NCBI RefSeq assembly: GCF_031769215.1
Contig: NW_026782185.1
Location: 62,001 to 126,000 of the forward strand
Direction: 5' to 3'
DNA: 64,000 nucleotides
Source: Ylistrum balloti
Taxonomy: Eukaryota
In this document: in pieces, positions 1 to 36,972 of the stretch
How the letters are laid out: every line of letters starts with the position of its first letter
How positions within the stretch are numbered: the stretch's first letter is position 1
The notes under the pieces: generated by a model
Database searches by the model: none
What the model was told of the DNA's origin: nothing
What the model saw: the letters and a program-made list of their open reading frames with translations, nothing else
Translations under genes and position numbers: made by a program

Positions 1-9
1 CTACTGTAC

Positions 10-2979
10 CTTGGCTTCTTCAAAGTACGGAGTAAAGACGCGTGGCCTCATATACATGCCGTTGTGTTTACTTCTGATCCAGGCACAGACCCTTTGTCCC
101 CCTGTAGCCTCGTCTCCCAACATGTGTGAGGGTGGCGTGCTCACCAAACCTCGTTTTATTGCACCACTTAACACTTCACTATTATAAGGAATGATATGAT
201 CCACGCGAATCAGGGGAAGTAACTCTGCTAAGATATCCCGCAATTCAATGTCGTTTAAATCTCTTTTCTTTACACCTTTCTTGCTTATGCTGTGTGTTGT
301 GTGGCTCAGTAAGTTGGGTTCTGAAAAGAAAAGCCAAGTCTCATAATACATGTTTGGTCAACGATAGTGTAGTAACTTCCGAGTTCGAAGAACCAGCCAT
401 TCAAATCTGAGAAATATCCTTCTAACACTTCTAAAAAAAGTGATAGCAACTTTAATCAGTCAAAAACCAAGATGTCTTCCTTTCTTATCTCTCTCCTTCC
501 AGAAATAAGTAAATACAAAACTGAATCAACTCACCTCTCTCCTCTATACGTCTTACTAACTGATGTTCTCCCCATTTCAGAACAGCTGTCAGTACATCTA
601 ACTCCCCTGCCTACAATATACAGAAAAAAATCAAAGAATGAACTTCTGAAAAGACATTTATAAAAATAGAACTAAATCATAAAGTAACTGTCAATCTGGA
701 AAAGTTTAATTTATGTATCACAGAAAATGAATTCAGGTAAAATGCCATGTGTGACAATTACATCCACCTTTAGAATATCAATTAAAACATTATGTAAATA
801 TCTATGTAAATAAGGTTTATCAATATCTGAAACTCACAACATCCTTTAGAAATCTGATAAATATTCAATACTACAATAATTTGGAATCTTATGTGCTGAG
901 TTTTATCACCATGCAAACAGCTGCTCTGGGTCATTATTTAGTGGGCATCTGTTGGCGCAGTTAGTTTAGGTGGCTATGTTACTGAACATTATACAGGAAG
1001 TCCATCCCAACCTATCAATAATTGGGGTGAAGTGTGCTTCCCTCTGACACAACCACTTAACGATCACTGCAGGATGGTTTCATGAGAAACTCAAACCCTC
1101 CAGATCAACCAGTACACACCTCAGATCTTCATCTCATTTGCATAAGCTGATGTTTTAACAATTGCACATATCTCCTTTTTTGCGTGGATCAATTTAAAAT
1201 AACATTGTTATGTAAATTGCACTGTATATAAAATGTCATGCTAGATAACACACTGAATATTACCACTGGAGATTTACCTGTAAGAAATCTGAGCTGAGTG
1301 CCTCTATCAGGTACTCTTTGCTAAGATCCAGAAGTACAGGAGAATGGACAACCTGGAGGAACTCCTCCCTCAGGTAGTGGAGTGCCTGGCGATGGACCCA
1401 CTGTGAACCGTGTGGCTCCGAACTCCAGCTGAGAATGTTGATCAGATTGTCTATACTGATGTGTTCTACAATGATGTCTTCACAACCTGTATAAAAACAC
1501 ATCATAAATGTTGAAAAATATTTCAGTTATCAGTAAGGCAGGTTTTTATTTTTTTTTTCGTCTAAATCCATCCATAAATCCAGCTGAATTTAATAATTGG
1601 TATTTAATTATGTGATTCAACTTTACTGGTATATGGGACAATGATGTGGTTTATGTTTTCTTTTAAAGGGTGTTTGGCTTGTAAAATGTCAATATAGGGA
1701 ACCACTACTGCAAAATATACATGTCATGCAGAGTAGAAATTCACTTTATTTTTTTTTATACATCAAAATCTAAATTTAAAATATTTAATATTACACATCT
1801 ATTCACCATCAGTTACGATGAAGACTTACCCTGTGATAATATTGGGAAGTCCAGGAACTGTCCTATTTGGTAAACTTCCATTGCCTCGTCCACTATTGTC
1901 ATTTGTCCCTTGCCTGCCACGATTGCCTGCGCCTCACTCAAGCTACACATACTTGCACTTCCCCGTAGTATCAACGATAAATCAACAGTATCTTGGTATA
2001 TTGCATTCAGTAACACTCTCGCATATCGCCTGGGAATCACGGATTCATCAAGCACAATTCTAGTAGGTGTATGTAAGGTACGATCAGTGATTTCCTCCCC
2101 TGACCGAGCTCTCCGTAACAGAAGGTTCCTAAAAAATGGTGATCGAGCAGCTAGAATTGCTTTATGGCAGTAGAGTTCATGCTGGGTGGTTTTACAGGTA
2201 AACTCATTGCTAGTGTATGATTCGGTCATAGATGCAGACATTGGATCTGGCATGTCTGCCACTAAGTCACATGAGAACACAAGCACAGCATCCCTATAGT
2301 CACCTGAATCTAGCAAATTCCTTAAATCCTGTTCTAAGGGATTTGGCATTCCGAACTCCTCCACCAATTTTATCAGCACTTTTTTGTGTTCATGCTTTAA
2401 ATCCTCTGTCTTGATTGAATCAGTATAAAGGTAACGAAGAAGTGATGCAAACAAGGTCACATCCACACCCGCTGTTCTGAAATTGATGGGAACCTGCATG
2501 TTGTAATCTGGGTATCTGCTCAACAGATTCCTGAAATAAGGACTCCGCATGGACAGGAGTGCTCGATGGGCTGGGAAACAAGCCCCTCGATATACAAGGT
2601 CAACATCTGATGAGAATTTTTTATCAAACAAGTTAGACAAATCTTGACGAAAAGAACTAGCTGCAGGTCTTGCAAGGTTGGCAGCCAGAGCCAACTCTTT
2701 CAAAGAAGCTAATGCTTCGTACTCCTGAATCAAGGCCTTCACCTCAGCCAGGGACCAGGATGCAGTTAGGTCACGCAACGCCTTCCCATAATCCAGAGAT
2801 CGGCTGTGTCGCCGAGCCCGTGTTAACTTTTTACGTAATGTTGCAAATTTTGATGCTTTCTTTTTCTTCTCACGAACATTTATGTCTGTGTCAGACACTG
2901 TATAAGCATGAGCGAGTCTAGAGAAAGCTGCTCGTGCCACCTGTTGGGAACTCTCCGGAAAGGAGGAGTTAGCTCCCAT
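10..2979 (-). CDS. BTBD7: BTB/POZ domain-containing protein 7, 5' part (4 coding exons; gene continues beyond window start)
   Basis: Coding exons 2979-1830 (MGANSS..., two BTB domains: DVDLVYRGACFPAHRALL, ELYCHKAILAARSPFFRNLL), 1486-1278 (GCEDIIVEH...SDFLQ, BACK-like), 610-535 (AGELDVLTAVLKWGEHQLVRRIEER, not in ORF track) and 320-10 (EPNLLSHT...PYFEEAK). All joins are GT-AG with consistent phases (1,0,1,0). Peptides closely match vertebrate BTBD7. ATG context CACCATGG; MG-start suggests myristoylation. Confidence 0.95.
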
Positions 2980-4800
2980 GGTGAAGCCGTTATGACAACC
3001 ACGTGTATTTATCTGAGCAGTTAGTTACAGATCATCCTGATGGGCAATCAGCCATTCTATTCCTTTCTAGCACAGAAAATGACAGGGTCACTTTACATCT
3101 TGGTCACATGCATGTGTCATTGTATCTGAAATTATAAAAAAGTTCAAGAATTGAACAGTATGAAGAAATGTATTAGAATTTGGTATTTCCATACACTTGA
3201 TAACTTTTGCACAACCTTGATAGGGCTTGGGACTTTTGCGTGCTTAAATCATCAAGCCTCAGAAAAAATTCTTTTCACAACCCGTTTTGAAACCTGGCTG
3301 ACAATTTATAACTTATAAGAGAAACAACATTTTTTGGCAGCTCTTTTCTGAAGGTAACCTATTTTATAAAAAATAATTCAGAAAGTTTACAACTAATTCA
3401 TGTCTTAAACAGGATATCAAAATAGGGAGTGTCCATTTTGATATTTCCGTCCTCATTTTCCAACATAAACATTTATATATTATATATAGTAACAGGAAGT
3501 TGTATACAATTAAAGTGACAAGTGATTTGTTACAGTTTCCATGTTGTTTATATATGCATGTAGCCTCAACTACCAGGTACTTATGTAATTAGCCATGGGC
3601 TGTGACTGACCTGTTATATTAATAACAATATTTATTTAATAATATGTACTTATAAAGGAATAACAAACCATTAACCGCACATATTGGCGTTCTAAAAAAT
3701 TGATGTTATAGCTATTTTGTTGTCCAGTATAGGCATTGCAATCTGGACTTTGGTTAAAGAATTGTATAACAGCTGCTTGGACCTAATTGCCTGGCATTGT
3801 TGACATTGCAGCAAAAAATCTTTATGTGAGTTCAGAGTGTCTTGTACACATAGAAATTTAATGGGAGTCATATACTTTCTAAATTGCTTAAATCTTATAA
3901 TGCGGGACCTATGGTGTTAAGCAATAAAGATGAAAAAGATGCAAGAAAATAAATGGTAGATTGATCAATGCTTTGGTTACATTGATGGTCTGTATACTGG
4001 CTCCCTGGCTTTCCTGGTACCCCGGACTTTGGTCAAAAATTACTGGCTTACATAATTATATTCCCAATCTGGCCTGCAACCTTCAGTTAATGATGAGCTT
4101 AAACATTAACATTCAGATCATGTACTTAGGATCTGAAGCAACACTCAATCAAATTTCTTCTTTCATGATAAAAATAAAGTAGTACAATGTCCATTTATGC
4201 TCAATTTCCAAGCATTCCAAGAACTTGAAGTGAAATTTGGAAGGAAAAATATTTGAATTAAACAAAAAAATATTTCAAGATGGCTGTCATGATTATGAAT
4301 GATGGTCATCTTGAATACTTGACCTATCCTAAAAAACAATATAATCTAATGAAAAAGATCAGTGATGACTCATTATCATGTATGGATTGAGTTAACTACA
4401 ATCACACAAAATCTATATAAAGCTTTATTTTAATGGAGCTGTGTCTATTTCTACCTGGTCTTCATAACAAGTGTAACTATAGTTGGATACACCAACAGAT
4501 ATTTAACTACATACTTAAATATGCAACATAAATTGACTGAGAAGCTCTGGATGAAGAAGAAGGTTAACACATTAACGTGTGTAAAATGATCAGGTACCGC
4601 ATCCAATTTTATTTTGTTCCACTGACTCCGACACAAAATACACTTGCATGGTTGACTTGAATTGCTGGCATATAGATAAAGTCTATCTTTTCTTTTTATC
4701 CCTCTTTTAGGAATTCACAACAACATTAAACAAAAACAGGAAAGTATACATAATATGGCTGTATTTCACCTTAAACTTGTACCTACACAGGTTTAGATTT

Positions 4801-7800
4801 GTGTATCACCTTGTATCTACACCTGTCTGTATCTACACCTTGTATCTGCACCTGTCTGTATCTACACCTTGTATCTACACCTGTCTGTATATCACCTTGT
4901 ATCTACACCTGTCTGTATCTACACCTATCTGTATATCACCTTGTACCTATACCTGTCTGTATATCACCTTGTATCTACACCTGTCTGTATCTACACCTGT
5001 CTGTATCTACACCTGTCTGTATCTACACCTTGTATCTACACCTGTCTGTATATCACCTTGTATCTACACCTGTCGGTATCTACACCTGTCTGTATATCAC
5101 CTTTTATCTACACCTGTCTGTATCTACACCTATCTGTATATCACCTTGTATCTACACCTGTCTGTATCAACACCTGTCTGTATCTACACCTGTCTGTATC
5201 TACACCTGTCTGTATCTACACCTTGTATCTACACCTGTCTGTATATCGCCTTGTATCTACACCTGTCGGTATCTACACCTGTCTGTATATCACCTTGTAT
5301 CTACACCTGTCTGTATCTACCCCTGTCTGTATCTACACCTTGTATCTACACCTGTCTGTATATCACCATGTATCTACACCTGTCTGTATATCAACGTGTA
5401 TCTACACCTGTCTGTATCTACACCTGTCTGTATCTATACCTTGTATCTATACCTGTCTGTATATCACCTTGTATCTACACCTGTCTGTATACACCTGTCT
5501 GTATCTACACCTGTCTGTATCTATACCTTGTATCTACACCTGTCTGTATATCACCTTGTATCTACACCTGTCTGTATATCACCTTGTATCTACACCTGTC
5601 TGTATATCACCTTGTATCTATACCTGTCTGTATCTACACCTATCTGTATATCACCTTGTATCTACACCTTGTATCTACACCTGTCTGTATCTACATCTTG
5701 TATCTACACCTGTCTGTATCTATACCTTGTATCTACACCTGTCTGTATCTATACCGTGTATCTACACCTGTCTGTATCTATACCTTGTATCTACACCTGT
5801 CTGTATCTACACCTGTCTGTATCTACACCGTGTATCTAAACCTGTCTGTATCTACACCTGTCTGTATCTATAACTTGTATCTACACCTGTCTGTATATCA
5901 CCTTGTATCTACACCTGTCTGTATATCACCTTGTATCTATACCTGTCTGTATCTACACCTATCTGTATATCATCTTGTATCTACACCGTGTATCTACACC
6001 TGTCTGTATCTACACCTGTCTGTATCTATACCTTGTATCTACACCTGTCTGTATATCACCTTGCATCTACACCTGTCTGTATCTACACCTTGTATCTACA
6101 CCTGTCTGTATTTACACCTTGTATCTACACCTGTCTGTATCTACACCTTGTATCTATACCTGTCGGTATCTACACCTTGTATCTACACCCGTCTGTATAT
6201 CACCTTGTATCTACACCTTGTATCTACACCTGTCTGTATGTCACCTTGTATCTACACCTGTCTGTATATCACCTTGTATCTACACCTTGTATCTACACCT
6301 GTCTGTATGTCACCTTGTATCTACACCTGGCTGTATATCGCCTTGTATCTACACCTTGTATCTACACCTGTCTGTATACCACCAGGAATCTACACCTGTC
6401 TGTATCTACACCTGTCTGTATATCACCTTGTATCTACACCTGTCTGTATACCACCAGGAATCTACACCTGTCTGTATCTACATCTTGTATCTACACCTGT
6501 CTGTATATCACCTTGTATCTACGCTTTGTATCTACATCTGTCTCTATCTACACCTTGTATCTACACCTGTCTGTATATCACCTTGTATCTACGCTTTGTA
6601 TCTACATCTGTCTCTATCTACACCTTTTATCTACACCTGTCTGTATCTACACCTTTTATCTACACCTTGTATCTACACCTGTCTGTATGTCACCTTGTAT
6701 CTACACCTGGCTGTATATCGCCTTGTATCTACACCTTGTATCAACACCTGTCTGTATACCACCAGGAATCTACACCTGTCTGTATCTACACCTGTCTGTA
6801 TATCACCTTGTATCTACACCTGTCTGTATACCACCAGGAATCTACACCTGTCTGTATCTACATCTTGTATCTACACCTGTCAGTATATCACCGTGTATCT
6901 ACACCTTGTATCTACACCTGTCTGTATCTACACCTTGTATCTACACCTGTCTGTATATCACCTTGTATCTACGCTTTGTATCTACATCTGTCTCTATCTA
7001 CACCTTTTATCTACACCTGTCTGTATCTACACCTTTTATCTACACCTGTCTGTATATCACCTTGTATCTACACCTATCTGTATATCACCTTGTATCTACA
7101 CCTTTCTGTATCTACACCTGTCTGTATCTACACCTGTCTGTTTACCACCTTGAATCTACACCTTTCTGTATCTACACCTTGTATCTACACCTGTCTGTTT
7201 ACCACCTTGTATCTACACCTGTCTGTATCTACACCTTGTATCTACACCTGTCTGTATCTACACCTGTCTGTATACCACCTTGAATCTACACCTTTCTGTA
7301 TCTACACCTTGTATCTACACCTGTCTGTATTTACACCTTGTATCTACACCTGTCTGTATCTACACCCTCGGTATCTACACCTTGTATCTACACCTGTCTG
7401 TATATCACCTTGTATCTACACCTTGTATCTACACCTGTCTGTATGTCACCTTGTATCTACACCTGTCTGTATATCACCTTGTATCTACACCTTGTATCTA
7501 CACCTGTCTGTATGTCACCTTGTATCTACACCTGGCTGTATATCGCCTTGTATCTACACCTTGTATCTACACCTGTCTGTATACCACCAGGAATCTACAC
7601 CTGTCTGTATCTACACCTGTCTGTATATCACCTTGTATCTACACCTGTCTGTATATAAATCTTGTATCTACACCTGTCAGTATATCACCGTGTATCTACA
7701 CCTTGTATCTACACCTGTCTGTATCTACACCTTGTATCTACACCTATCTGTATCTACACCTTGTATCTACACCTGTCTGTATCTACACCTTGTATCTACA

Positions 7801-10800
7801 CCTGTCTGTATCTACACCTGTCTGTATACCACCTTGAATCTACACCTTTCTGTATCTACACCTTGTATCTACACCTGTCTGTTTACCACCTTGTATCTAC
7901 ACCTGTCTGTATCTACACCTTGTATCTACACCTGTCTGTATCTACACCTGTCTGTATATACCACCTTGAATCTACACCTTTCTGTATCTACACCTTGTAT
8001 CTACACCTGTCTGTATTTACACCTTGTATCTACACCTGTCTGTATCTACACCTGTCTGTATCTACACCGTGTATCTAAACCTGTCTGTATCTACACCTGT
8101 CTGTATGTCACCTTGTATCTACACCTGTCTGTATATCACCTTGTATCTACACCTTGTATCTACACCTGTCTGTATGTCACCTTGTATCTACACCTGTCTG
8201 TATATCACCTTGTATCTACACCTTGTATCTACACCTGTCTGTATGTCACCTTGTATCTACACCTGTCTGTATATCACCTTGTATATCACCTTGTATCTAC
8301 ACCTGTCTGTATACCACCAGGAATCTACACCTGTCTGTATCTACCTTGTATCTACACCTGTCTGTATACCACCAGGTATCTACACCTGTCTGTATCTACA
8401 CCTTGTATCTACACCTGTCTGTATATCACCTGTATCTCCTTGTATCTACACCTGTCTGTATCTACACCTTGTATCTACACCTGTCTGTATATCACCTTGT
8501 ATCTACGCTTTGTATCTACACTGTCTCTATCTACACCTTGTATCTACCTGTCTGTATATACCTTGTATCTACACCTGTCTGTATCTACACCTTGTATCTA
8601 CACCTGTCTGTATATCACCTTGTATCTACACCTGTCTGTATACACCTGTGTGTATCTACACCTGTCTGTATCTACACCTGTCTGTACACCTGTCTGTATC
8701 TACACCTGTTGTATCTACACCCTGTACACCTTGTATCTACACCTGTCTGTTTACCACCTTGTATCTACACCTGTCTGTATCTACACCTTGTATCTACATC
8801 TGTATCTACACCTGTCTGTATACCACCTTGAATCTACACCTTTCTGTATCTACACCTTGTATCTACACCTGTCTGTATTTACACCTTGTATCTACACCTG
8901 TCTGTATCTACACCTTGTATCACCTGTCTGTATCTACACCTTGTATCTACACCTGTCTGTATATCACCTTGTATCTACACCTTGTATCTACACCTGTCTG
9001 TATGTCACCTTGTATCTACACCTGTCTGTATATCACCTTGTATCTACACCTTGTATCTACACCTGTCTGTATGTCACCTTGTATCTACACCTGGCTGTAT
9101 ATCGCCTTGTATCTACACCTTGTATCTACACCTGTCTGTATACCACCAGGAATCTACACCTGTCTGTATCTACACCTGTCTGTATATCACCTTGTATCTA
9201 CACCTGTCTGTATACCACCAGGAATCTACACCTGTCTGTATCTACATCTTGTATCTACACCTGTCAGTATATCACCGTGTATCTACACCTTGTATCTACA
9301 CCTGTCTGTATCTACACCTTGTATCTACACCTGTCTGTATCTACACCTTGTATCTACACCTGTCTGTTTACCACCTTGTATCTACACCTGTCTGTATCTA
9401 CACCTTGTATCTACACCTGTCTGTATCTACACCTGTCTGTATACCACCTTGAATCTACACCTTTCTGTATCTACACCTTGTATCTACACCTGTCTGTTTA
9501 CCACCTTGTATCTACACCTGTCTGTATCTACACCTTGTATCTACACCTGTCTGTATCTACACCTGTCTGTATACCACCTTGAATCTACACCTTTCTGTAT
9601 CTACACCTTGTATCTACACCTGTCTGTATTTACACCTTGTATCTACACCTGTCTGTATCTACACCTTGTATCTATACCTGTCGGTATCTACACCTTGTAT
9701 CTACACCCGTCTGTATATCACCTTGTATCTACACCTTGTATCTACACCTGTCTGTATGTCACCTTGTATCTACACCTGTCTGTATATCACCTTGTATCTA
9801 CACCTTGTATCTACACCTGTCTGTATGTCACCTTGTATCTACACCTGGCTGTATATCGCCTTGTATCTACACCTTGTATCTACACCTGTCTGTATACCAC
9901 CAGGAATCTACACCTGTCTGTATCTACACCTGTCTGTATATCACCTTGTATCTACACCTGTCTGTATACCACCAGGAATCTACACCTGTCTGTATCTACA
10001 TCTTGTATCTACACCTGTCAGTATATCACCGTGTATCTACACCTTGTATCTACACCTGTCTGTATCTACACCTTGTATCTACACCTGTCTGTATATCACC
10101 TTGTATCTACGCTTTGTATCTACATCTGTCTCTATCTACACCTTGTATCTACACCTGTCTGTATATCACCTTGTATCTACACCTTTTATCTACACCTGTC
10201 TCTATCTACACCTTTTATCTACACCTGTCTGTATCTACACCTTTTATCTACACCTGTCTGTATATCACCTTGTATCTACACCTATCTGTATATCACCTTG
10301 TATCTACACCTTTCTGTATCTACACCTGTCTGTATCTACACCTGTCTGTTTACCACCTTGAATCTACACCTTTCTGTATCTACACCTTGTATCTACACCT
10401 GTCTGTTTACCACCTTGAATCTACACCTTTCTGTATCTACACCTTGTATCTACATCTGTCTGTATCTACACCTTGTATCTACACCTTGTATCTATACTTG
10501 TCGGTATCTACACCTTGTATCTACACCTGTCTGTATATCACCTTGTATCTACACCTTGTATCTATACCTGTCTGTATGTCACCTTGTATCTACACCTGTC
10601 TGTATCTACATCTTGTATCTACACCTTGTATCTATACCTGTCGGTATCTACACCTTGTATCTACACCTGTCTGTATATCACCTTGTATCTACACCTTGTA
10701 TCTACACCTGTCTGTATCTACACCTGTCTGTATATCACCTTTTATCTACACCTGTCTGTATCTACACCTTTCGGTATATCACCTTGTATCTACACCTGTC

Positions 10801-10877
10801 TGTATCTACACCTGTCTTTATCTACACCTGTCTGTATCTACACCTGTCTGTATATCACCTTGTATCTACACCTGTCT
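4801..10877. repeat. ~6.1-kb complex minisatellite built from 12/13/16-bp units (TGTATATCACCT, TGTATCTACACCT, TGTATCTACACCTGTC) with higher-order blocks
   Basis: Directly visible tandem array. The + strand almost lacks stop codons, which explains the very long low-complexity ORFs in all three + frames. Confidence 0.98.
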
Positions 10878-12707
10878 GGATACAGGTTTCCATGTGTATT
10901 ACCTTATGTTATCAGGGTATCACTTTTTGTCACTCCATCTATATTTAGCTGTCAGGTATATCATTATATAGGTAATTACTTACAAATGTGTAGCTCATGA
11001 TAATGACACATGCATATAAAAAAGTAGAAAAAATAGGAAAGTAAACCAAACAGAAACGCTGAGAAATGAAATCTTCCCACTTACCATTTCACTGACCTAT
11101 CAAAAAATATCCAATCACAGAAACTGTTACATAACGTATTTTCTCTTTACAGATATATGGTACTATTTATAAAACACACATTCAAGTGTCATTATAAATG
11201 TACTACACAATCTAATTTGATTAGGAAACTTTTGGCACGCTGTGTATAGATTGGCCCCTACAGGGCACATGATATCTACAGTTTTAAGCTACAACTTTAA
11301 TGGCATTTTAATCTCCATAGCCATGAATTCGAAGCAGATTTTTTTTGTAAAGACTTGAATTTACATTATATTTATATCTAAGATGCATTTAATTAAGAAT
11401 CAGTTTTCACATAGCATTCCCAGCATTAAGTCAGTATTTAGGTAAATATATATGTCATGATTAAAGCAAACGTGTAAAACAGTATGTTGTAGGAATTGGA
11501 ACGCCTTGGTATTGTATAAATAAGTGTACATTGGAACATCACCCTGGCTTTCCTTGCCAGCCTCAGACTTCAAAGTGCCTGTGGAGATTCTCTGATTTAT
11601 CAGCAAATGGGCTCCACCCCTCTCACAGATATAGACTGGAGACTCCCTTTCACTTCAGTAAAACTAAGACATGACCCAGGCTGCAACTGCTACTGTCTCA
11701 TATTTCTTCAATTTATCAAACATGTCCAGATTAAGCTGGCTCCTGTAAATGATTTGATGGGCAAATTGTACACAACTTCAAAAACTGATGAGAGTGAGAT
11801 TTATCTCAACACCAGAAATTCCATCAAAGTTAACTGTGGATGTTTTACACCAGAAAGCATATGGCTCTTAATTATAGAACATACAATATTGATGAAGATT
11901 TTAGTTTTAGACAAAATACTTGGTAAAGAGTCACCCAAAAAATGGTCTACAAAATTAAAGTAAATCTGGTACAACTGTGCTTTTGCTAGCTAGAGCTGTT
12001 GTACACATCAGCATTCATATACATGCAGGTAAACAGTGTAACATGATAATTTATTTTTTATTGAATTATATATCTAATTTTGAATTTCATTACTTAGCAA
12101 TATTTTCTGTGGATATTGTATGCATTATCAATATGAAGTATGGTGTCTGTTTTGTGCTAATGTAACATTTTAAGATGCTAATTACAAAATGCAAAATTGT
12201 AGAGCTAAAATGTATAGTAAATAAATGTAGATAATAAATCTGTTTATGGAAAGTACAATAATTTCATACAAATTGAGCTGTAGTTTTCATATATCATACC
12301 AATGAGATTTCATTGCCCTGTAAATAAATAGTATATCATCCCCCACCCCCCCCCACCTTTGCCTTCCCATTCCCCCAACCCCTTTGACTCTTGTGAATTT
12401 ATAGGTCTCCTCGGATTCATAATCATGATAATGACTTCCTTCTATTAACGACAAAAACTTAAGGTATTTGGTCACTTGTAAATATACATATAACACCGGT
12501 AAAAACAAAGATGCTATTCTAAACCTTGAATTTTCTACAGCTATGGTCCCAGATCACAGGAATCCTCCAGGATACACTTAAGTTAGCTGTAAATATTCTT
12601 CATGCATGACATTCCATTAATTAGCAGTCTTTTAATAAATCTCTTTATCCCAGTATATTTCCCTTTCAATGGAAGCAAAGAAATATGAATGGTCTATTAC
12701 AATATTA

Positions 12708-13800
12708 AACAAGAGATCCCAGAGGGATCATGGCGCCCACCATTTGAGGATCTGTTTTCAGTTCTTGAAGATTTGTTTATTTTTTTTTGTGTGTTACAGG
12801 TGTTGTAAATGTTCATGAACTGGTCTTCATTGAATGTACTCAATGATGGCACAAGATATTTTTATTAAGCACCTATTAGCAAATATCATTTGAAAAAGAT
12901 CCCAAAGTATTATTAGATAGCAGTCAGTTACAGGTGGATAATGCTGACAATCCAAGATGCTTGTGCCACCTTGATTTGTATCCAAAAAAGGTACAATGCA
13001 CAACTAGGGACCAAGGGAAACCAATATCTATGAAATATCAGAAGGATCCATCCAGTATGGCTAACAAGCCTGGTGCCTGGCCACCAAAAAGATATTGATT
13101 TCATATGAAATAAGTCCAGTAAAGAAATAGCAGATATAATGCACAAAAAAGGTATAAACTAGGGACCAAGGGGAACCTGCATATGAAATTTGAGAAAGAT
13201 CCATCCAGTACTTTCCAAGAAATAGCGATAACAAACTTTTACATCCAAAATCCATGATGGCCACCTGTCGGCCATCTTGAATTCGAATCAGTCCAAAAAA
13301 GGTACAATGCACAACTAGGGACCAAGGGGAACCTGCATATGAAATTTGAGAAAGATCCATCCAGTACTTTCTCCGAAATAGCGGTAACAAACTTTTACTT
13401 CCAAAATCCAAGATGGCCACCTGTCGGCCATCTTGAATTCAAATCAGTCCAAAAAAGGTACAATGCACAACTAGGGACCAAGGGGAAACTGCATATGAAA
13501 TTTGAGAAAGATCCATCTAGTACTTTTCCATAAATAGCGGTAACAAACTTTTACTTCCAAAATCCAAGATGGCCACCTGTCGGCCATCTTGAATGCGAAT
13601 CAGTTCAAAAAAGGTACAATGCACAACTAGGGACCAAGGGGAACCTGCATATGAAATTTGAGAAAGATCCATCCAGAACTTTTCCAGAAATAGCAGTAAC
13701 AAGAATTGTTTACGGACGGACGGACGCCCGGACGGACGGACCACGGACGCAGGGCGATTTGAATAACCCACTATCTATTTGAATAGATGGTGGGCTAAAA
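12708..13800 (-). mobile_element. Non-autonomous Helentron (HINE)-type element carrying ~5 tandem ~156-bp satellite-like units
   Basis: On the - strand: TTTTAGCCCACCATCT...AGATAGTGGG subterminal inverted repeat, (CGTC)n microsatellite (13716-13750), central repeats (GGTACAATGC at 12990, 13301, 13457, 13613; last two spacings 156 bp) and a 3' hairpin GATCCC-TCT-GGGATC ending CTTGTT. Confidence 0.8.
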
Positions 13801-16258
13801 AGCCTTCGATCTGGTTCAGCACAAGGATCTCTTATAGTCACAAACTTTAATGCTAGCTTTGGTATTTGCAGTTCATTATATAGCTTTTATGGTTTGAAGA
13901 TTATCTTCAAAACCAGAAACAAAGAGTTGTTATTAATGGAAAAAGCTCAATTTGGTTTAACATTAATGCTGTGTTCCACAAGGTTCCATACTGGGTCTTC
14001 CTTTGTTTCTCATATTCATAAATGACCTTGTAAGAAATATTAGTTCTATTCCTTTGTTTTCTGAAGATGATTTATTTTTATATCTTTCATTAATACTCTT
14101 CTCATAGGTGTAGACATTTTAAATAGATATCTAAAAAATTCATGAATGATCAATGAAATCATTGGTCAATTTTAACCCGAACAAAACTGCAACCCTATTA
14201 AAAATTCATAATAACTGTTACCCCATATCTCAACCCCGCCTATGAATCTTACTAACATTAATACAGTCACATTCCACAAACATCTTCTTACTCTTATTTC
14301 AAGTATTTGGTGCTGAAAAGACAACGTTATTATTATCTAACGTAAAAAATGCATGGAAGGTAAACAGGACCACAGCACTCATGTTTGCGATAACTCATCC
14401 TATCACTTGTCACACAACTTTGTATAAATTCCATCATTGGCCTCTGTCTGGAACTTCCTACCTGACCAGATAGAGTGTGACCTTAATATAAATACCCACA
14501 CTAAAAAAAGAATTCAAAGGGACTTACTATGAGAGTCAACTGATCTTTCTAATATTTAAAAAGACAAACTCTTTAAAAGAGTGTAGCATTTGCTAACTTG
14601 TGTATGTATACTTAATGAACAAGCTGAAACAAGACATTAACAAGGACCTAAGTAATATTTTCTGCTAGAGTTACCTTCCTTATATGAACATATCACAGAT
14701 GTTGCGGTCGAGATGCAAACCAGCTTCACACATTCATTTCATTAAATCAAGATACAATTACATTCATCTATACAAGAATGTACTTTTCATTAGATAAAAA
14801 AATTACTTTATATAACTTGCATTTGACCAGAATAACAGAGTAAACTTTGCAAGCTGTATGCTGATCATGATAGGGATTTAAATGCTTTCACTACCAAAAT
14901 ACCTAGGTACCTGAGGAACAATTTACAATGCCTTTTTCCCACTCTTGCAGGAGTAGAACAAGATACGTAGCTCTACTTTCTACCTTTCCTTATAACAAAC
15001 GTTATTGAAAACTAAAATTTAAATTTCAGATATCTAAGTGATACTAAATACATGTATATACCAAATCTGTATTTCTCAACATTTTTCCACTCAGTAAGAT
15101 CAGTCATATTATATTCTACATACTAGACTAAGAAAGAGGTGCAGTTCTCTCCAATTTTACTTGTTTCAAAGACAAATACATTGACATCTTATGTGTTCAA
15201 AATTTAATGCTCACTCTTGTACTTGATTAAATGTGAATATTTTTCTGTACTAATGTATATCAGCATGGTTTTCTGTCAACTTTCATTCAACTGAATGAAT
15301 TTTGTGAACACAACTCCAGATTTTCAACATCAAGCTGACAACAAAAATTACTCTTATTGATGTCAAAATATTTCAGTGGTATGCTTGGCAACTTCCCATT
15401 CCCTTTCATTACTACCTTTTCTATGTATACAATTTCGTCATGCCTCGCTCAAACGGTTATGTTTCGTAATGGAGATCGATTTTATGTGCAACACTTGTTT
15501 TTTAATCCAATTTTATCTCTTTTGCGGTAGGCTTATTGTTTATATTTCATAGGAATGAAATAAACTTTATAGTAACAGAATGAGGCATATGCAGTGAATG
15601 AAGAAGATTTTATGTTTCCATGCATTGTCTAACTACAGTAAACAGCTAATATCTTGTCAATGTATACATTTATCCTGCAACTGATACTGCCGTTGTCGGA
15701 ATACATGTACACCTACCACATATATTTTTATTGTATTCAGCAGTGATGGAAAACAGTTGTATTTTAGCATGTGTATTAATTCAATAGAATTACATTCTGA
15801 ATTTACGTTTTGAAATAGAAATAGTTGTTGAAATAAGCGATTTTACATGTTGTAATGAACAAGTTGATGTAGCAGGGGTAGATCACTATATATATGATAT
15901 CTAAATATTGGTAAATATGGTTGAAATGTCCAGAACATATCTAAATCTTTCTCATTATAAATATCAAACTCAGAACCTGTCAAACGTGAATTACGGGTTT
16001 TGGGTACCGGCTATTATACGTTAAACTAGGATCGGACATGAACGGAGAATCGTTTGGAAGCCTTAGTTCTTTTGATCAGCCGACCAAATATACATGAACC
16101 CCGGGTCCGCAATCAATGCAAGACAAACCGTCACCTGTGAGGCTGTGTACACAACCGATAGTTGTTTACTGTTTAGAATGTTGAGAATAACAGCCACTAA
16201 GATACAATTCAACTATCTTCAGTATTAAAGACATAAAATATGTTTTCTAAGAACTCAC

Positions 16259-16400
16259 CATGTCTGTTCTTGGTGGTAATAAAAATGATAAATCGTTGCA
16301 GAAAATGATTACATTCCTTTCACCTTTTCCTTCTCGTTCACATTCACTACAATTTCTCATGACGTTAAAACCGCAGCAAATGACATTAAATAAAATATAC
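16259..16400 (-). other. BTBD7: Candidate non-coding first exon of BTBD7
   Basis: Strong donor GTGAGT at 16258-16253 on the - strand inside a CpG-retaining region. An acceptor (TTTTCTGTGCTAG) lies at 3067, 87 nt upstream of the BTBD7 ATG. The 5' limit is a guess. Confidence 0.4.
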
Positions 16401-16560
16401 CAAAATGATCAATAGCCTAAATATTATCATTATTAATTTTGATATAAAAATCAAAATGAGAGGATAGTTCTATGATTAACATTTAGAAATATGGCGATAA
16501 CTCTATAGATTTTATCATTTTCTGCGGACCGTGTACGGCCGCCATTATACACATTCACGA
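16300..16560. promoter_or_regulatory. Probable bidirectional promoter shared by BTBD7 (-) and COX8 (+)
   Basis: Divergent first exons lie ~300 bp apart in a CpG-retaining stretch (about 15430-17170) flanked by CpG-poor DNA. An ETS/GABP-like CGGAAGT occurs at 16715-16721, just inside COX8 intron 1. Confidence 0.55.
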
Positions 16561-19003
16561 TGGCAGGGGTTATGCGAGGCGTACTAGGCATTGGATCCAA
16601 AGTAGGATCCCCCTTAAAATCACAAGTTAGAGGCATGTTGAACCCTGGCCCTCCAGTAAACCCACTGACCAAGACAGTAAGTAAATGGAAGCTATGAAAT
16701 ATGGTTTATGACGACGGAAGTAAATAATTAGTAATCCTTATTCTGAGCAAATGAAGGGCAAAGAGGGCATATACCGTCTATTTTTTAAATTATGCATCGA
16801 TTATCATGATGCATAAATGGATAATGTACGTGTGGCTAGTGAATGAACTCAAGAAAGATGAGTCCATTCCTCGTATCAATTCACAGAAATAAAACACTTT
16901 TAGACTCATACCGCCAAATTACAACAGAGTGTAAATGGAGAATTCAAACAACAGAATTAATCATGTGTTTACATGTTCAGTTGTCCGAATTATTCTGACG
17001 TTCCAAAGGACCATTGAGCTTATTCGATGTGTGGCATCCATGAACTGCTTGTCCGGAGTCTGGCGTTCATCTGTCAGTTTTTTTCTGATAATTGCTACTA
17101 GTCGTGAACGGCTAGTAATTCTTGACCAAACTTGGTCAGAAGCATCTCTTGGTGAAGCGGAGATCAATTTAGTGTAAATGGTGGGTTTCGGCTCCCTGAG
17201 GTGGGAAGGGAGGGGTCCAATAGGGGAAATAGAAGAAATATTTTGAATTCCTACTTCAGTGATTAGGTTTTGTCCAAATTTGGTCAGAAGAACATTTGAG
17301 TGATCTCATGAAGGGAAATCAATTTCATATAAACGGATCTGATGCATGTTTAGGTGCAGTGAAAACAGTTTTGTATAAATGTTGGGTCTTTGCCCCACTG
17401 GGAAGAAGTGGAAGGGCTCAATATGCAGAAATGGCTTATATCTGCGAAATGGCTTATATCTTTTAAACAGTAGGGATGCCCACCCTATATATTCATATAT
17501 AGCATTGGTGGGCCTCAAGAGTTAAATTTAGTCATGATGTACAAATCAGTCCTGAGCTGTGGCCCTACACCCAGGGACTTAGTTTCTTAGTCATTTCTTT
17601 GAAACAGTCGAGATCCCCACCCAACAACCATATAACATTGTTAAGCATAAAGAAATAAACACATTCATGATGTCATGACTGGCGATGGGGTCTGGCCCCA
17701 TCCCCAGGGACTTAGTTTGATAATAGTTTCCTTGTTATATCTTTGAAGCAATCAAAATCTCTACCCCAATATACATTTAGCAATGCTGGACATAAAGAGT
17801 TCAACACATTCATCATTTAAGTACTGCTCCTTTGGTGTTGCCCCACCCTTTGAACTTAATTTCTAGGTTATATCTTTGAAGCAGTTCAAATATCCACCCC
17901 ATAACTATATCAATTGCTTGGCATCTGATGATCGAAGACATGAACATATTCATGATGTAGGAAATGATCCATGGGTGTAGCACACCTCTAGGGACTTAAT
18001 TTCTTGGTATTATTTTTGAAACAGTTCCAAATCCAATAACCATATAAACTCTTACTGGGCATCAACAGAGAAAGTTATATAAGAATTAACCATTGGTCTT
18101 GCACAACCAAAACACTCAAATGACTTAGCTGTGAGTTTGAAATATTTGAAATACAAAACCCATTATACATGTAACCCATTGCTAGGTTTTAAGATCCAGA
18201 TGAGTGATACAGGCCCTCTGAGCCTCTTGTTTTATGTAGGCCTAGATCTGGAGTTGATAAACAGGAGAATTTCATCCCTTTGAAAGTGAAGGAAATTAGT
18301 AACCCATACATGGGTTGACATTCAAACAATAATGGTGGAAATAAATTGTCATTTTCACATGAATATCACATATGAATCAAATGTTCTTTATATTATTTTC
18401 AAATATGACATGTCTCATAATACTAATACATTCACTGGATTTACATTTCCCCATTTGCAATCATACTCTGTTCTAATTTACGTTTGTGTTAGCCAATCCT
18501 CAACTATAGTCTTCCCCTGAGCAAATGCTTAGGCAATAAATACATTTTGCCCTTGATCTTCCATTTAACTTCTGTGCCATATCCCGTGGCGGCCATCTCC
18601 TGTTGAAGCAGATGATCAACCTCAATATTTGAGAAATGTATGATAATGACATGCTCAAATAGGTCATCGAAACATGAAGTGGAGAGTGTGATGATGATAT
18701 GTAATCTTTGTGACATATTCCAATTTCCTTTTCTCCATTTAAATGAACTTATCAGTAATGTCAGAATGTCCACATGATATATGATAAACATTACAACTGG
18801 TAACATTAATATTCTCTGTTTGAAGTATATGCTTTCATTGACTTATGTGACTGGGCTATAAGTAATTCTAATATTCTTTATCATTTCAGGAGGCCTACTT
18901 AGGAGGGTTTTTGATCCAGGTAATAATCTATGCTGTTCCCACATATTTTCTGTCACAGTACCCAGTGTATGGAAGACATGAATACAGGGAAGACAGATTA
19001 TAA
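16560..19003 (+). CDS. COX8: Cytochrome c oxidase subunit 8-like, 76 aa, 2 exons (16560-16676, 18890-19003)
   Basis: Spliced product MAGVMRGVLGIGSKVGSPLKSQVRGMLNPGPPVNPLTKT|EAYLGGFLIQVIIYAVPTYFLSQYPVYGRHEYREDRL*. It has a basic, acid-free presequence ending VRG, a GPPxNP motif, one hydrophobic helix and PxYFLS (compare COX8 PAGWILS/PAWVLY). Perfect donor ACA|GTAAGT, acceptor TTTCAG, phase-0 intron before E. Candidate AATAAA at 19270-19275. Confidence 0.8.
17030..18231 (+). mobile_element. Degenerate HINE/Helentron-like element in the COX8 intron
   Basis: Internal GACCAAACTTGGTCAGAAGCATC motifs, degenerate internal repeats (GGGGT...GCCCC...AGGGACTT) and a 3' end CAGATGAGTGATACAGGCCCTCTGAGCCTCTTGTT like that of the element at 22047-22956. 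Confidence 0.55.
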
Positions 19004-20372
19004 TCAGCCGAGGTGATAGTGATGTGTTTGTTGTACTGTGATGGATAGAAAACCGAGAGTTGAATTCATTTCAGCAGTGAGCTAATCAGGAAAAGATATA
19101 TCTAGATTTACAGCATGCTTTAAAGACGAAAGGAAATTCCAGACCTATCGAAGTGGGATTGTTACCATGGTTTTAGAGATGGACAAGAAGTGGAGGTTGG
19201 ACATGGACAATTTTCATTTAATTCTGTAGTTTTCTATCCATCTTTAAATGTTACAATAGTATTTGATTGAATAAATTGAAGAAATTGGAATTGATTTGTT
19301 TTATATTTGTATGTCATGGCCGATTTTCATTTTGATTTTAAGGTCACGATACCATCATCAGCCAGAAGGTATGAACACGAAATGTCACTAACATGGCAAG
19401 TTGACGATGTAATGGATTCACCTTGTACATAAAAAGAAGGCCAGGTCAGGCAAATGTATCCCTGTAGAAATATAACAGGGAAATATGACAAATATGACAA
19501 AATTATCAACTAAAAAGTGGTAAAAAAAGAAAAAAATAGCCATATATACATGTGTGAAGTATGAACTAAACACAACTACATATAGATAACTGGTAATGTA
19601 AATGGTAAAGTGTAATGTGGATTTTTTTTTTTTTAGCAACACTGACCTATATTTTGCCATTTATATAAAATTTGTTCAAGATTGTTTAAAAAAGATTTAT
19701 CTGAAAAAATATGACAGTTCTATTTTGAGAAACAGTGACCTTTATTTTGGCATATGATAATCAATAGTGTGTAATAGTGGGAGTATCAAACATTTAAGGT
19801 CATTTCGTTTTAGTGCAGAATTTATTTCTTCTTCAGAAGTTTTCCACATGCCTCAAAAAGATTTTTTGACAGTATGTATATTAGTATGGAATTGTCTCAC
19901 CATCCGTCCACCTTTGATATCTGTAGATCTCGTACTACAGTTTGTTAACTGATCTTTTTCTAACTTGGTAATCTTGATCGCCATGACATGTTTTTCTGAA
20001 CAGCAGTCAGATTCAAAAGTATTCGGAGGAGTTATTGCCCTTTGTTGTTAGAATTGATGATCTCACATCACAACCAGCAGAAGATTAAAGATGACTACAC
20101 GGTCATCTTCATCTGACAAATGAACAGTATGAAGCATGCTTGCACTGACTTACAATGTATGTAGTGTACTACTATGAGATGGTTAGGAATCAACCACTTT
20201 TTTGGGCAGAAGGCAGTACTATAATTTAATGTACAATGAGGTAGAAGAAAGTGTGACAGGATTGAAAAAAATTAGAATAAAGCACACAAGATAACAATGT
20301 ACTGTAGTGGATTCAGCTAAACTCTTAAGGAAATGTCATGTACATATCTTACTTCCATAATGTTAATCTTGT

Positions 20373-26500: not shown

Positions 26501-27419
26501 TTGTGTTCTGCCTCTACTAAATTCAAGTTACTAGTGCCAGTGGCACCTACTTATATATACAGGAAAATCATTGAACTTTTAAACTGGTATCAGCCAGTAA
26601 TTTTTTGTAGGATTTTTTCAGGCGAGTCAAGAACACCAATTCAAAATTATTGATGTGTTCCAAAACCAAGAGATGAAGTGGGTTCTCAAAAGTCCCACAA
26701 AAAGAGCAAAAGTCCAGGAATTGAATTCCTGAAACACAAAAATCAATGCACCACACATTCTTGCTTTTTCTTCTCAAGCCTTTCTCAGGAATGAATTTGG
26801 CACTTTAAATGTAAAGGATTACCTCGGTGTCCTTCTGTAATTTGAACACCTCATTCTCCTCAAGTTGATCCATATGTTTGAGAAGAATGGTTGAGAAACG
26901 GAGGTCAGACTTGTCGACCTGACCTTGAACTTCTTCATCTGTTAAATATTGACCAATCAGCTGCTCATACAGGTAGGGGTCACGATGCTTCATGGAATCT
27001 TCACTAAAATACTCTCCTCTCTCAATCAGCTGCTTCATAGCTTTATAGCGACGATTCTTAACCCTATTAGCAGAATAAGTTGTACTCCTCTCTTTCTTTA
27101 TCTGTTTCAAGTAGAACTGTATTTCATAATCATCAGACTTGTCTCGGAAATATTCCAGATCATCTGCTCCAAGGTAAGCACCAAACCGTGCTAAGAACAA
27201 CGAAGGACTTTTTTCTAGAATACTGATTGCAATCTCCTTCTTGTCTTCACAGGACAGGTCTGCCTCACCTCGTTGCTGGTGCTTAAAATGAGCTTCTGTC
27301 TGAGACAATCTGGTCAACATATTTTCTCTAATCTGGTTGACTGCCGGTTGAAGATCTGTCATTTCATCTGCTTCTGCTCCTAATATGGAGTGTGGATCAT
27401 CCACGTGAACCTCATCCAT
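23567..27419 (-). CDS. CCDC97: Coiled-coil domain-containing protein 97 (DUF2052), 343 aa, 4 coding exons
   Basis: Exons 27419-26823, 26323-26278 (DSQFEEEDEDSDEEE), 25845-25728 (EMEKEEEE...MQERFLSGQEHQFDY) and 23837-23567 (EVDNNTDYDDLD...DEEERYFDSEEPE...*). GT-AG phases 0,1,2 sum to 1032 nt. Motifs KNRRYKAMKQLIERGEYFSEDSMKHRDPYLYEQLIGQYLT and DEEERYFD match CCDC97. Acceptor at 27453 implies a non-coding upstream exon. Confidence 0.93.
24430..25147 (-). mobile_element. Degenerate HINE-like element in CCDC97 intron 3
   Basis: The - strand begins TTTTAGGTCCCCTGACCCAAAGG...GATGACCTAT. Internal unit CATTTCAGGCAAGTTTCAGCT occurs twice (about 24538 and 24844). Left boundary uncertain. Confidence 0.4.
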
Positions 27420-36809: not shown

Positions 36810-36972
36810 NNNNNNNNNNNNNNNNNNNNNNNNNNNNNNNNNNNNNNNNNNNNNNNNNNNNNNNNNNNNNNNNNNNNNNNNNNNNNNNNNNNNNNNNNNN
36901 NNNNNNNNNNNNNNNNNNNNNNNNNNNNNNNNNNNNNNNNNNNNNNNNNNNNNNNNNNNNNNNNNNNNNNNN
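36810..36972. other. Assembly gap (163 N)
   Basis: Run of N. Confidence 1.

What the first reader, a model, noticed from the sequence alone, without database searches (positions are those of the whole stretch)
2979..19003. BTBD7 and COX8 head-to-head: possible bilaterian-age microsynteny
BTBD7 (-) and COX8-like (+) diverge from a ~300-bp CpG-retaining interval. From memory, human BTBD7 (14q32) is also on the opposite strand with COX8C a short distance beyond its 5' end (UNC79 starts in between). If orthologous, this pair has stayed linked since the protostome-deuterostome split, implying a conserved shared promoter, and would mark the COX8C locus rather than COX8A as the ancestral COX8 position.
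Basis: partly seen in the sequence, partly recalled or inferred. Interest (0 to 1): 0.7.

Follow-up and report, generated by a model that had tools for sequence, protein, structure and literature searches.

The report
Divergent COX8-like and BTBD7 gene pair
In this bivalve a small two-exon gene, probably a very divergent cytochrome oxidase subunit 8, points away from BTBD7; a clear COX8 holds the same place in a gastropod and Cox8c follows Btbd7 in a map-ordered mouse gene list, so the pairing is old, but a shared promoter and a bilaterian age are not proven.

Summary
BTBD7 is certain. Three minus-strand exons match BTBD7 proteins, and the start codon ends at 2979.

The COX8-like gene (exon 1 16560-16676, exon 2 18890-19003, plus strand) is a clean model. 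It has a presequence-like N-terminus, a GPP motif, a phase-0 GTAAGT donor, one membrane helix and a poly(A) signal. No sequence search calls it COX8.

Its best support is positional. A gastropod contig (L002) carries, upstream of BTBD7 on the other strand, a two-exon gene of the same build, and its exon 2 passes Pfam's COX8 threshold.

The two start codons lie 13.6 kb apart, not 300 bp. A shared promoter is inferred only:
- there is a single CpG island, at the COX8 5' end, in both species;
- a candidate splice acceptor precedes the BTBD7 start codon.

No RNA data exist.

No COX8 was seen within 10 kb upstream of BTBD7 in ten other long loci. These include oyster, blood clam, Lottia, two annelids, a fly and a fish.

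A map-ordered mouse gene list ends with Btbd7, Cox8c. COX8A and COX8C lie in paralogous blocks, so "which one is ancestral" is ill-posed.

COX8 was reported missing from 31 bivalve transcriptomes. This gene may be it.

The scan had noted this gene on this same window (s1-262918), not on other DNA.

The parts
1813..2979 (-). BTBD7 first coding exon (ORF bounds; start codon 2979-2977; homology ends near residue 384)
   Evidence: BTB Pfam E 8.7e-24. 74% identity to the cluster that holds the Tegillarca granosa protein, and named BTBD7 relatives.
1263..1505 (-). BTBD7 second coding exon (within this ORF), BACK domain
   Evidence: Pfam BACK E 1.3e-5. 71% identity to residues 372-443 of the C. virginica BTBD7-like protein.
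4..351 (-). BTBD7 third coding exon (within this ORF); the gene runs off the window
   Evidence: 72% identity to residues 467-570 of the C. virginica BTBD7-like protein.
3013..3014 (-). Candidate splice acceptor AG, 33 nt upstream of the BTBD7 start codon
   Evidence: Read from the sequence. Relatives L001, L003, L008-L011 show clear acceptors 40-85 nt upstream of their start codons. Not confirmed by RNA.
4800..10882 (.). 6.1-kb satellite (units of 16/28/29 nt) in the presumed BTBD7 first intron
   Evidence: Tandem Repeats Finder, score 5050, about 424 copies. Strong strand skew.
15800..17100 (.). The only CpG-retaining island between the BTBD7 start codon and the end of the COX8-like gene; presumed promoter region
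   Evidence: CpG observed/expected is 0.84-1.03 here against 0.06-0.45 in most flanking 500-bp bins (one repeat bin at 13.5 kb reaches 0.70). L002 has the same single island at its COX8 5' end.
16253..16259 (-). Candidate end of a non-coding BTBD7 exon 1 (last exon base 16259, donor GTGAGT 16258-16253)
Evidence: Read from the sequence. No RNA support.
16560..16676 (+). COX8-like exon 1: 39 codons, presequence-like, GPP motif, phase-0 donor GTAAGT
   Evidence: Translation. It has no acidic residues and five basic ones. The architecture matches L002 exon 1. Single-copy depth in run X1.
16677..18889 (+). Intron of the COX8-like gene; contains dispersed repeats
   Evidence: Raised contig depth and many repeat joints at 17.1-18.3 kb in X1.
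18890..19003 (+). COX8-like exon 2: 37 codons plus stop, one membrane helix with a proline, aromatic and charged tail
   Evidence: Translation. It is the only hit in the window for the COX8-type motif and the structural scan. No Pfam or PDB match.
19270..19275 (+). AATAAA poly(A) signal, about 270 nt after the stop codon
   Evidence: Read from the sequence.

Best explanation
Shown: the window holds the 5' part of a bivalve BTBD7 gene on the minus strand. 13.6 kb upstream of its start codon, on the plus strand, lies a two-exon gene for a 76-residue protein with a mitochondrial-type presequence and one membrane helix.

Inferred: this gene is most likely the species' very divergent COX8, a small accessory subunit of cytochrome c oxidase.

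Inferred: BTBD7 probably starts at a non-coding exon inside the single CpG island at the COX8 5' end. The two genes would then be transcribed divergently from one promoter region, and the 6-kb satellite would lie in BTBD7's first intron.

Shown: the same arrangement, with a clear COX8, exists in a gastropod. It therefore dates at least to the bivalve-gastropod ancestor, if the window gene is the orthologue.

Plausible but unproven: the adjacency of Btbd7 and Cox8c in mammals makes a still older, bilaterian origin possible.
For: Identity of BTBD7.

Gene model: a start codon with A at -3 and G at +4, a GTAAGT donor, a TTTCAG acceptor, matching phase 0, a stop codon and AATAAA.

The gastropod locus L002:
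- COX8 exon 2 scores E 9.5e-6 and 25.9 bits against a cut-off of 24, on Pfam profile positions 14-43 of 43.
- Three of its four PDB hits up to E 10 are COX8A or COX8B.
- It lies on the strand opposite BTBD7, 6.8 kb upstream of the real BTBD7 start codon.

Shared features of the two genes: the N-terminus is M-[A/S]-G-V-[M/L]-R, GPP is followed by exactly seven residues before the phase-0 GTAAGT donor, and exon 2 starts with Glu.

The structural scan found an exon 1 plus exon 2 pair only in the window and in L002, across about 0.37 Mb of long loci plus 31 short ones.

Tree and cluster names place the window with bivalves and L002 with gastropods.

Both species have a single CpG island at the COX8 5' end. 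Relatives have splice acceptors before the BTBD7 start codon.

Mouse gene order runs Btbd7, Cox8c. Cattle BTBD7 and UNC79 fall in one 230-kb window.

COX8 was not found in 31 bivalve transcriptomes by homology searches (PMC8136519). This fits a bivalve COX8 too divergent to detect.
Against: - Neither window exon matches Pfam COX8, NCBIfam or any PDB COX8 chain.
- BLASTP finds no alignment between the window exon 2 and the L002 exon 2.
- Global alignment scores are not significant against shuffles: p 0.065 for exon 1 and 0.11 for exon 2.
- Adding the window exon to the L002 profile loses the COX8 hits.
- No homologue turned up in the word search or the 1.84-billion-protein search, although all three were underpowered.
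- There is no RNA evidence. The only run is DNA.
- No COX8 lies within 10 kb upstream of BTBD7 in C. virginica, T. granosa, another bivalve-clade contig, Lottia, two further mollusc contigs, Owenia, Capitella, Rhagoletis or a fish.
- The two promoter regions share no motifs.
Confidence: 0.6

Rival explanations
1. The plus-strand ORF pair is not a working COX8. It is either a chance pair of short ORFs with good splice signals, or a decayed relic of a COX8 that once sat here.
For: No sequence search supports a COX8 identity. Both ORFs are under 40 codons. The scan criteria were partly designed from this very sequence.
Against: Many independent gene-like features coincide: the start context, position in the only CpG island, a strong donor and acceptor in matching phase, a presequence-like composition, a membrane helix and AATAAA. 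It sits where a true COX8 sits in L002, with the same intron position. The exons are single copy and intact in a second individual, with one conservative Leu/Val difference.
Confidence: 0.15
2. The gene is real and the pairing is molluscan. The adjacency of Btbd7 and Cox8c in mammals arose independently, so there is no bilaterian-age microsynteny.
For: No COX8 was found within 10 kb upstream of BTBD7 in Owenia, Capitella, Rhagoletis, the fish Aldrovandia, or several molluscs. In Lottia the upstream CpG island belongs to a histone-fold gene. No UNC79 is seen in the 45 kb downstream of the COX8-like gene here.
Against: The same two genes are neighbours in the same divergent orientation in two phyla, which is unlikely by chance among roughly 20,000 genes (inference). 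The 10-kb flank limit would have missed even this window's own 13.6-kb spacing. Lottia keeps NRDE2 next to BTBD7, and NRDE2 is on the same human 14q list, so the wider neighbourhood is conserved.
Confidence: 0.3
3. The two genes are neighbours but have separate promoters. BTBD7 would start at an unseen CpG-poor promoter somewhere in 3-15 kb, not in the COX8 island.
For: No transcript data exist. 13.6 kb separates the start codons (6.8 kb in L002). The window's acceptor before the start codon is weaker than in relatives. The two islands share no motifs.
Against: No other CpG island lies upstream of the BTBD7 start codon in either species. Relatives clearly splice into the start-codon exon. A strong minus-strand donor lies inside the island at 16258. 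L002 has ATG|GTAAGT in the matching place, near position 3930.
Confidence: 0.3

Closest known systems
COX8 family (Pfam PF02285; mammalian COX8A, COX8B, COX8C)
   Same: A small protein of about 70 residues with an N-terminal presequence, a PP motif before a single membrane helix, a proline followed by aromatic residues at the helix end, and a short charged tail. The gene has two exons. The L002 gene at the same position is a scored member.
   Different: The window's exons score nothing against the family model or solved COX8 chains. The proline-to-aromatic spacing is one residue shorter, and the tail is longer and more acidic.
Mammalian BTBD7 / UNC79 / COX8C neighbourhood (human 14q32.12, mouse chr 12)
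   Same: BTBD7 and a COX8 gene are neighbours. A mouse list in map order gives Btbd7, Cox8c. COX8C is at 14q32.12 on the plus strand (a retracted paper, so weak support). By recollection the two are on opposite strands.
   Different: In mammals UNC79 starts between them and COX8C lies inside it. The retracted paper's locus length of 374,660 bases fits this, and cattle BTBD7 and UNC79 are adjacent. No UNC79 is in this window. COX8C is testis-enriched (PMC10877148). No human sequence was examined here.
Bidirectional CpG-island promoters of housekeeping and mitochondrial genes
   Same: Divergent genes with a single unmethylated-looking CpG island between them, one partner being a respiratory-chain subunit.
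   Different: The transcription starts are unknown. The definition, starts less than about 1 kb apart, could not be tested.
Ancient conserved microsyntenic gene pairs of metazoans (the kind described by Irimia and colleagues in 2012; cited from memory)
   Same: Two unrelated genes are kept adjacent across phyla, possibly through shared regulatory DNA.
   Different: This pair was not found in the searchable literature. Conservation is shown here for only two mollusc lineages plus literature on mammals.

Membership tests
COX8 (PF02285) | Significant match to the family profile | tested here: not met
Window exon 1 and exon 2, searched separately by reference, gave no family up to E 10. The positional counterpart, L002 exon 2, passes: 25.9 bits against a cut-off of 24.
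COX8 (PF02285) | Similarity to solved COX8 chains | tested here: not met
   phmmer of window exon 2 against the PDB found no COX8. L002 exon 2 has COX8B and COX8A as weak top hits. A joint profile loses them.
COX8 (PF02285) | N-terminal mitochondrial presequence followed by one membrane helix, total length about 70 residues | tested here: met
   Exon 1 has 5 Lys/Arg and no Asp/Glu. Exon 2 has a hydrophobic stretch with mean hydropathy 1.63 over 17 residues. Total length is 76 residues, against 71 in L002.
COX8 (PF02285) | Two-exon gene with a phase-0 intron just before the Glu that opens the helix segment (profile position 13/14) | tested here: met
   In both the window and L002, GPP is followed by 7 residues, then GTAAGT, and exon 2 starts with Glu. 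L002 exon 2 starts at profile position 14.
COX8 (PF02285) | Conserved helix-end motif P-x-x-[W/Y]-[I/V]-L ... [Y/F] | tested here: inconclusive
   The window has P-T-Y-F-L-S-Q-Y-P-V-Y, which fits a loosened pattern with one residue fewer. L002 has P-A-A-W-V-M-M-N-I-K-A-Y.
COX8 (PF02285) | Subunit of assembled cytochrome c oxidase | not testable with these tools
   Needs proteomics or a structure of bivalve complex IV.
Bidirectional promoter pair | Opposite-strand transcription starts within about 1 kb | not testable with these tools
   No RNA run was found; X1 is DNA. There is only a candidate donor at 16258 and a candidate acceptor at 3013-3014.
Bidirectional promoter pair | One CpG island spanning both 5' ends | tested here: inconclusive
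   There is a single island at 15.8-17.1 kb in the window and at 3.2-4.2 kb in L002. Whether BTBD7 starts in it is inferred.
Bilaterian-age microsynteny | The same adjacency in several phyla, including deuterostomes and intermediate lineages | tested here: inconclusive
   Present in the window (bivalve), L002 (gastropod) and mouse by literature. Not seen within 10 kb in ten other long loci. The flank limit is shorter than this window's own 13.6-kb spacing.

The most novel reading that the evidence does not exclude
This gene is the bivalve COX8 that homology searches failed to find in 31 bivalve transcriptomes. It is recognisable only because it has kept its place, head-to-head with BTBD7, since before bivalves and gastropods split. 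That pairing is a bilaterian-age block from which both vertebrate COX8A and COX8C loci descend.
Probability: 0.35. Interest if true: 0.55.

Novelty: new member of a known kind. Interest (0 to 1): 0.4.

Why it matters
First, COX8 was reported as not found in any of 31 bivalve transcriptomes used to study mitonuclear coevolution (PMC8136519). A position-based candidate gives that field a concrete sequence to test. It also suggests that some other 'missing' small respiratory subunits are simply too divergent to detect.

Second, a BTBD7-COX8 pair shared by molluscs and mammals would add a documented case of very old gene adjacency. It would also tie COX8A and COX8C to one pre-duplication locus.

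Both points are modest in scope. Conserved pairs of this kind are already known in the hundreds.

Tried and rejected
Searches that gave nothing:
- Pfam and NCBIfam on each window exon.
- PDB sequence search with exon 2.
- Word-index protein search with the ORF-extended exon 2 (43 aa) and exon 1 (62 aa). The first excludes by length the 76-residue model itself. Both need three shared 5-residue words.
- phmmer of the 37-residue exon 2 against 1.84 billion proteins: no hit at E 0.001. A query this short cannot reach that threshold except for near-identical proteins.

RNA evidence: the only run holding the region is a DNA run from another individual.

Scans of other loci:
- tblastn and a two-sequence HMM against all fetched loci gave only self hits and one chance hit at 11667-11777. 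In one search the two short exon-2 peptides printed were written into the local script.
- 31 metagenome BTBD7 loci have short flanks and no COX8.
- A k-mer comparison of the two promoter islands found nothing above chance.
- The CpG-rich stretch upstream of BTBD7 in Tegillarca overlaps a 111-residue ORF that I read as transposon-like; this was not tested, and I did not take the stretch as a promoter.

Left out:
- The joined 76-residue spliced model was not sent to any search tool, by operators' rule. Exons were searched one by one, by reference.
- No human sequence was fetched or compared.
- The N run at 36810-36972 was left as it is.
Full report
WHAT IS THERE

The low end of the window carries three minus-strand coding exons of BTBD7.
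- The first is the ORF 1813-2979 (388 residues, starting MGANSS). It has a BTB domain (Pfam E 8.7e-24). In the word-index search its best named relatives are BTB/POZ domain-containing protein 7.
- The ORFs 1263-1505 and 4-351 match residues 372-443 and 467-570 of the 804-residue Crassostrea virginica BTBD7-like protein at 71-72% identity.

A tree of 120 homologues places the window in a clade (support 97) together with the clusters that contain Tegillarca granosa and C. virginica proteins. The window therefore comes from a bivalve whose own proteins are not in the database; the top identity is 74-75%.

THE COX8-LIKE MODEL

On the plus strand a start codon at 16560 (A at -3, G at +4) opens 39 codons that end at ACA|GTAAGT (16676/16677). 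After a 2.2-kb intron, TTTCAG is followed at 18890 by 37 codons and a stop at 19001-19003. AATAAA lies at 19270.

Exon 1 has five basic and no acidic residues and ends with a GPP motif plus seven residues. Exon 2 starts with Glu and holds one hydrophobic helix with a proline, then an aromatic and charged tail. This is the general build of COX8.

Every direct test of that name failed:
- no Pfam or NCBIfam family for either exon;
- no COX8 chain in the PDB search;
- nothing in the word-index search with either ORF-extended exon;
- nothing at E 0.001 among 1.84 billion proteins.

The last three searches had little power for queries of 37-62 residues, so they say little. By operators' rule the joined 76-residue model was not searched; exons were searched one at a time by reference.

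THE GASTROPOD COUNTERPART

I fetched genomic loci around BTBD7 homologues and scanned them with a COX8-type motif. One locus gave a hit: L002, an ENA assembly contig of 458 kb whose BTBD7 exon 1 is 65% identical to the window's.

On the strand opposite BTBD7 it carries a two-exon gene:
- exon 1 at L002 3302-3189 has 38 codons, starts MSGVLR and ends with GPP plus seven residues, then GTAAGT;
- exon 2 at 1309-1208 follows a TTTCAG acceptor, starts with Glu and has 33 codons.

Exon 2 alone passes Pfam's own COX8 threshold (E 9.5e-6, 25.9 bits against a cut-off of 24). It aligns to profile positions 14-43 of 43, which puts the intron at profile position 13/14. Three of its four PDB hits up to E 10 are COX8B or COX8A. 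No sizeable ORF lies between this COX8 and BTBD7. The real BTBD7 start codon in L002 is near 10085, so the start codons are about 6.8 kb apart.

L002's BTBD7 falls in a clade (support 99) with Lottia and with clusters that hold Nucella, Pomacea, Candidula, Bradybaena and Elysia proteins. L002 is therefore a gastropod.

HOW STRONG IS THE LINK BETWEEN THE TWO GENES?

By position and structure it is strong. Both genes have the same side and strand relative to BTBD7, two exons, the same N-terminal M-[A/S]-G-V-[M/L]-R, the same distance from GPP to a phase-0 GTAAGT donor, and a Glu opening exon 2. A structural scan for such an exon pair found it only in the window and in L002. The scan covered about 0.37 Mb of long loci plus 31 short metagenome loci. 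The scan rules were partly drawn from these two sequences, so this is not an independent statistic.

By sequence it is weak:
- BLASTP finds no alignment between the two exon 2 peptides;
- global alignment scores are not better than shuffles (p 0.065 and 0.11);
- a joint profile loses the COX8 hits in the PDB.

I put the chance that the window gene is the COX8 orthologue at about 0.75.

A published survey fits this picture. It reports that COX8 was not found in any of 31 bivalve transcriptomes by HMM and PSI-BLAST annotation (PMC8136519). A bivalve COX8 too divergent to detect is what the window gene would be.

THE PROMOTER CLAIM

The two start codons are 13.6 kb apart. Between them lie a 6.1-kb satellite (4800-10882) and a 156-bp tandem array (13157-13702). 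What the sequence offers:
- a minus-strand ATG|GTGAGT donor at 16258;
- a candidate acceptor 33 nt before the BTBD7 start codon, with clear acceptors 40-85 nt upstream of the start codon in six relatives;
- one CpG-retaining island at 15.8-17.1 kb in an otherwise CpG-depleted 24 kb.

L002 shows the same picture. It has a single island at 3.2-4.2 kb, next to the COX8 start, and none nearer BTBD7. An ATG|GTAAGT donor on the BTBD7 strand lies near 3930.

This supports a shared promoter region but does not prove it. The only public run holding this DNA is a DNA run from another individual. It shows the exons as single copy and intact. The two islands share no motif above chance.

OTHER LINEAGES

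No COX8-type exon pair was found within 10 kb upstream of the BTBD7 start codon in any of these loci:
- L001 (a contig of the bivalve clade), C. virginica and T. granosa;
- Lottia, and two further mollusc-clade contigs (L008, L009);
- the annelids Owenia and Capitella;
- the fly Rhagoletis;
- the fish Aldrovandia.

None of the annotated genomes among them lists a COX8 gene there.

The fetch limit of 10 kb is shorter than this window's own spacing, so these are not proofs of absence. In Lottia the upstream CpG island sits at the 5' end of a divergent histone-fold gene. In Owenia an island lies 2.4-4 kb upstream of BTBD7 with no partner gene seen. The tight pairing is therefore not universal.

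MAMMALS

I did not fetch or compare any human sequence. From papers:
- A mouse chromosome 12 interval is listed in map order and ends '...Itpk1, Moap1, Btbd7, Cox8c' (PMC4519886).
- Cattle BTBD7 and UNC79 share one 230-kb window (PMC9392250).
- One human signal colocalises with expression effects on both BTBD7 and UNC79 (PMC11713753).
- A retracted paper lists COX8C at 14q32.12 on the plus strand within a locus of 374,660 bases, which fits nesting in UNC79 (PMC7537880; weak support).

The window has no UNC79. The next gene downstream is a CCDC97-like gene on the minus strand.

WHICH COX8 LOCUS IS ANCESTRAL?

Pig genes in map order read MACROD1, OTUB1, COX8A, NAA40, RCOR2, MARK2 (PMC12071171). 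The human 14q list that holds COX8C and BTBD7 also holds OTUB2, RCOR1 and MARK3 (PMC6834745). Four paralogue pairs point to paralogous blocks, presumably from the vertebrate genome doublings (inference). Both COX8 loci would then descend from one older locus, and BTBD7 was kept on only one copy. The either/or question is ill-posed.

VERDICT

BTBD7 is certain. The COX8-like gene is probably real and probably COX8. The divergent pairing is shared by a bivalve and a gastropod. A bilaterian age is plausible (about 0.45) but untested in the lineages that matter. The shared promoter is an inference (about 0.55).

I found no paper that reports this pair. The scan had already noted the gene itself on this same window (s1-262918), not on other DNA.

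Noticed in passing
window 4800-10882: A 6.1-kb satellite of about 424 copies of a 16-nt unit (also read as 28/29 nt), strongly strand-skewed. On the BTBD7 sense strand each unit contains CAGGTG. It lies in the presumed first intron of BTBD7 and accounts for much of the 13.6-kb spacing.
   Followed up: partly
window 13157-13702: A 156-bp tandem array (3.5 copies, 94% matches) that generates repeated short ORFs on both strands and a local CpG-rich patch. No Pfam family was found.
   Followed up: partly
window 23570-27419 (-): A CCDC97-like gene (Pfam CCD97-like_C, E 2.7e-21), convergent with the COX8-like gene. No UNC79 is visible downstream.
   Followed up: partly
window 47537-48457 (+): An intact-looking Tc1/mariner-type transposase ORF of 306 residues (DDE_3, HTH_Tnp_Tc3_2) in the most GC- and CpG-rich kilobase of the window.
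   Followed up: partly
window 31.7-32.0, 42.8-43.1 and 58.5-58.7 kb (+): Three near-identical exon ORFs (peptide ...EQLIGPDIAGHPVWNLR...VPWHQ...) point to tandem paralogues. Another note of the scan calls this gene a dioxygenase.
   Followed up: no
L004 (Lottia gigantea KB201299.1): NRDE2 lies just downstream of BTBD7, and NRDE2 is on the same human 14q gene list. A 98-residue histone-fold gene lies divergently upstream at the only CpG island.
   Followed up: partly
window 15.6-15.9 and 18.1-18.3 kb: Contig depth in run X1 rises to about 600x and 290x against a background of 10x. These are dispersed repeats beside the CpG island and inside the COX8-like intron.
   Followed up: no
window 16259 (-) and L002 near 3930 (+): Both candidate BTBD7 first-exon donors read ATG|GTRAGT. 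In the window that ATG would be in frame with the main start codon after splicing (11 codons in between, no stop). In L002 a stop intervenes. Probably coincidence.
   Followed up: partly
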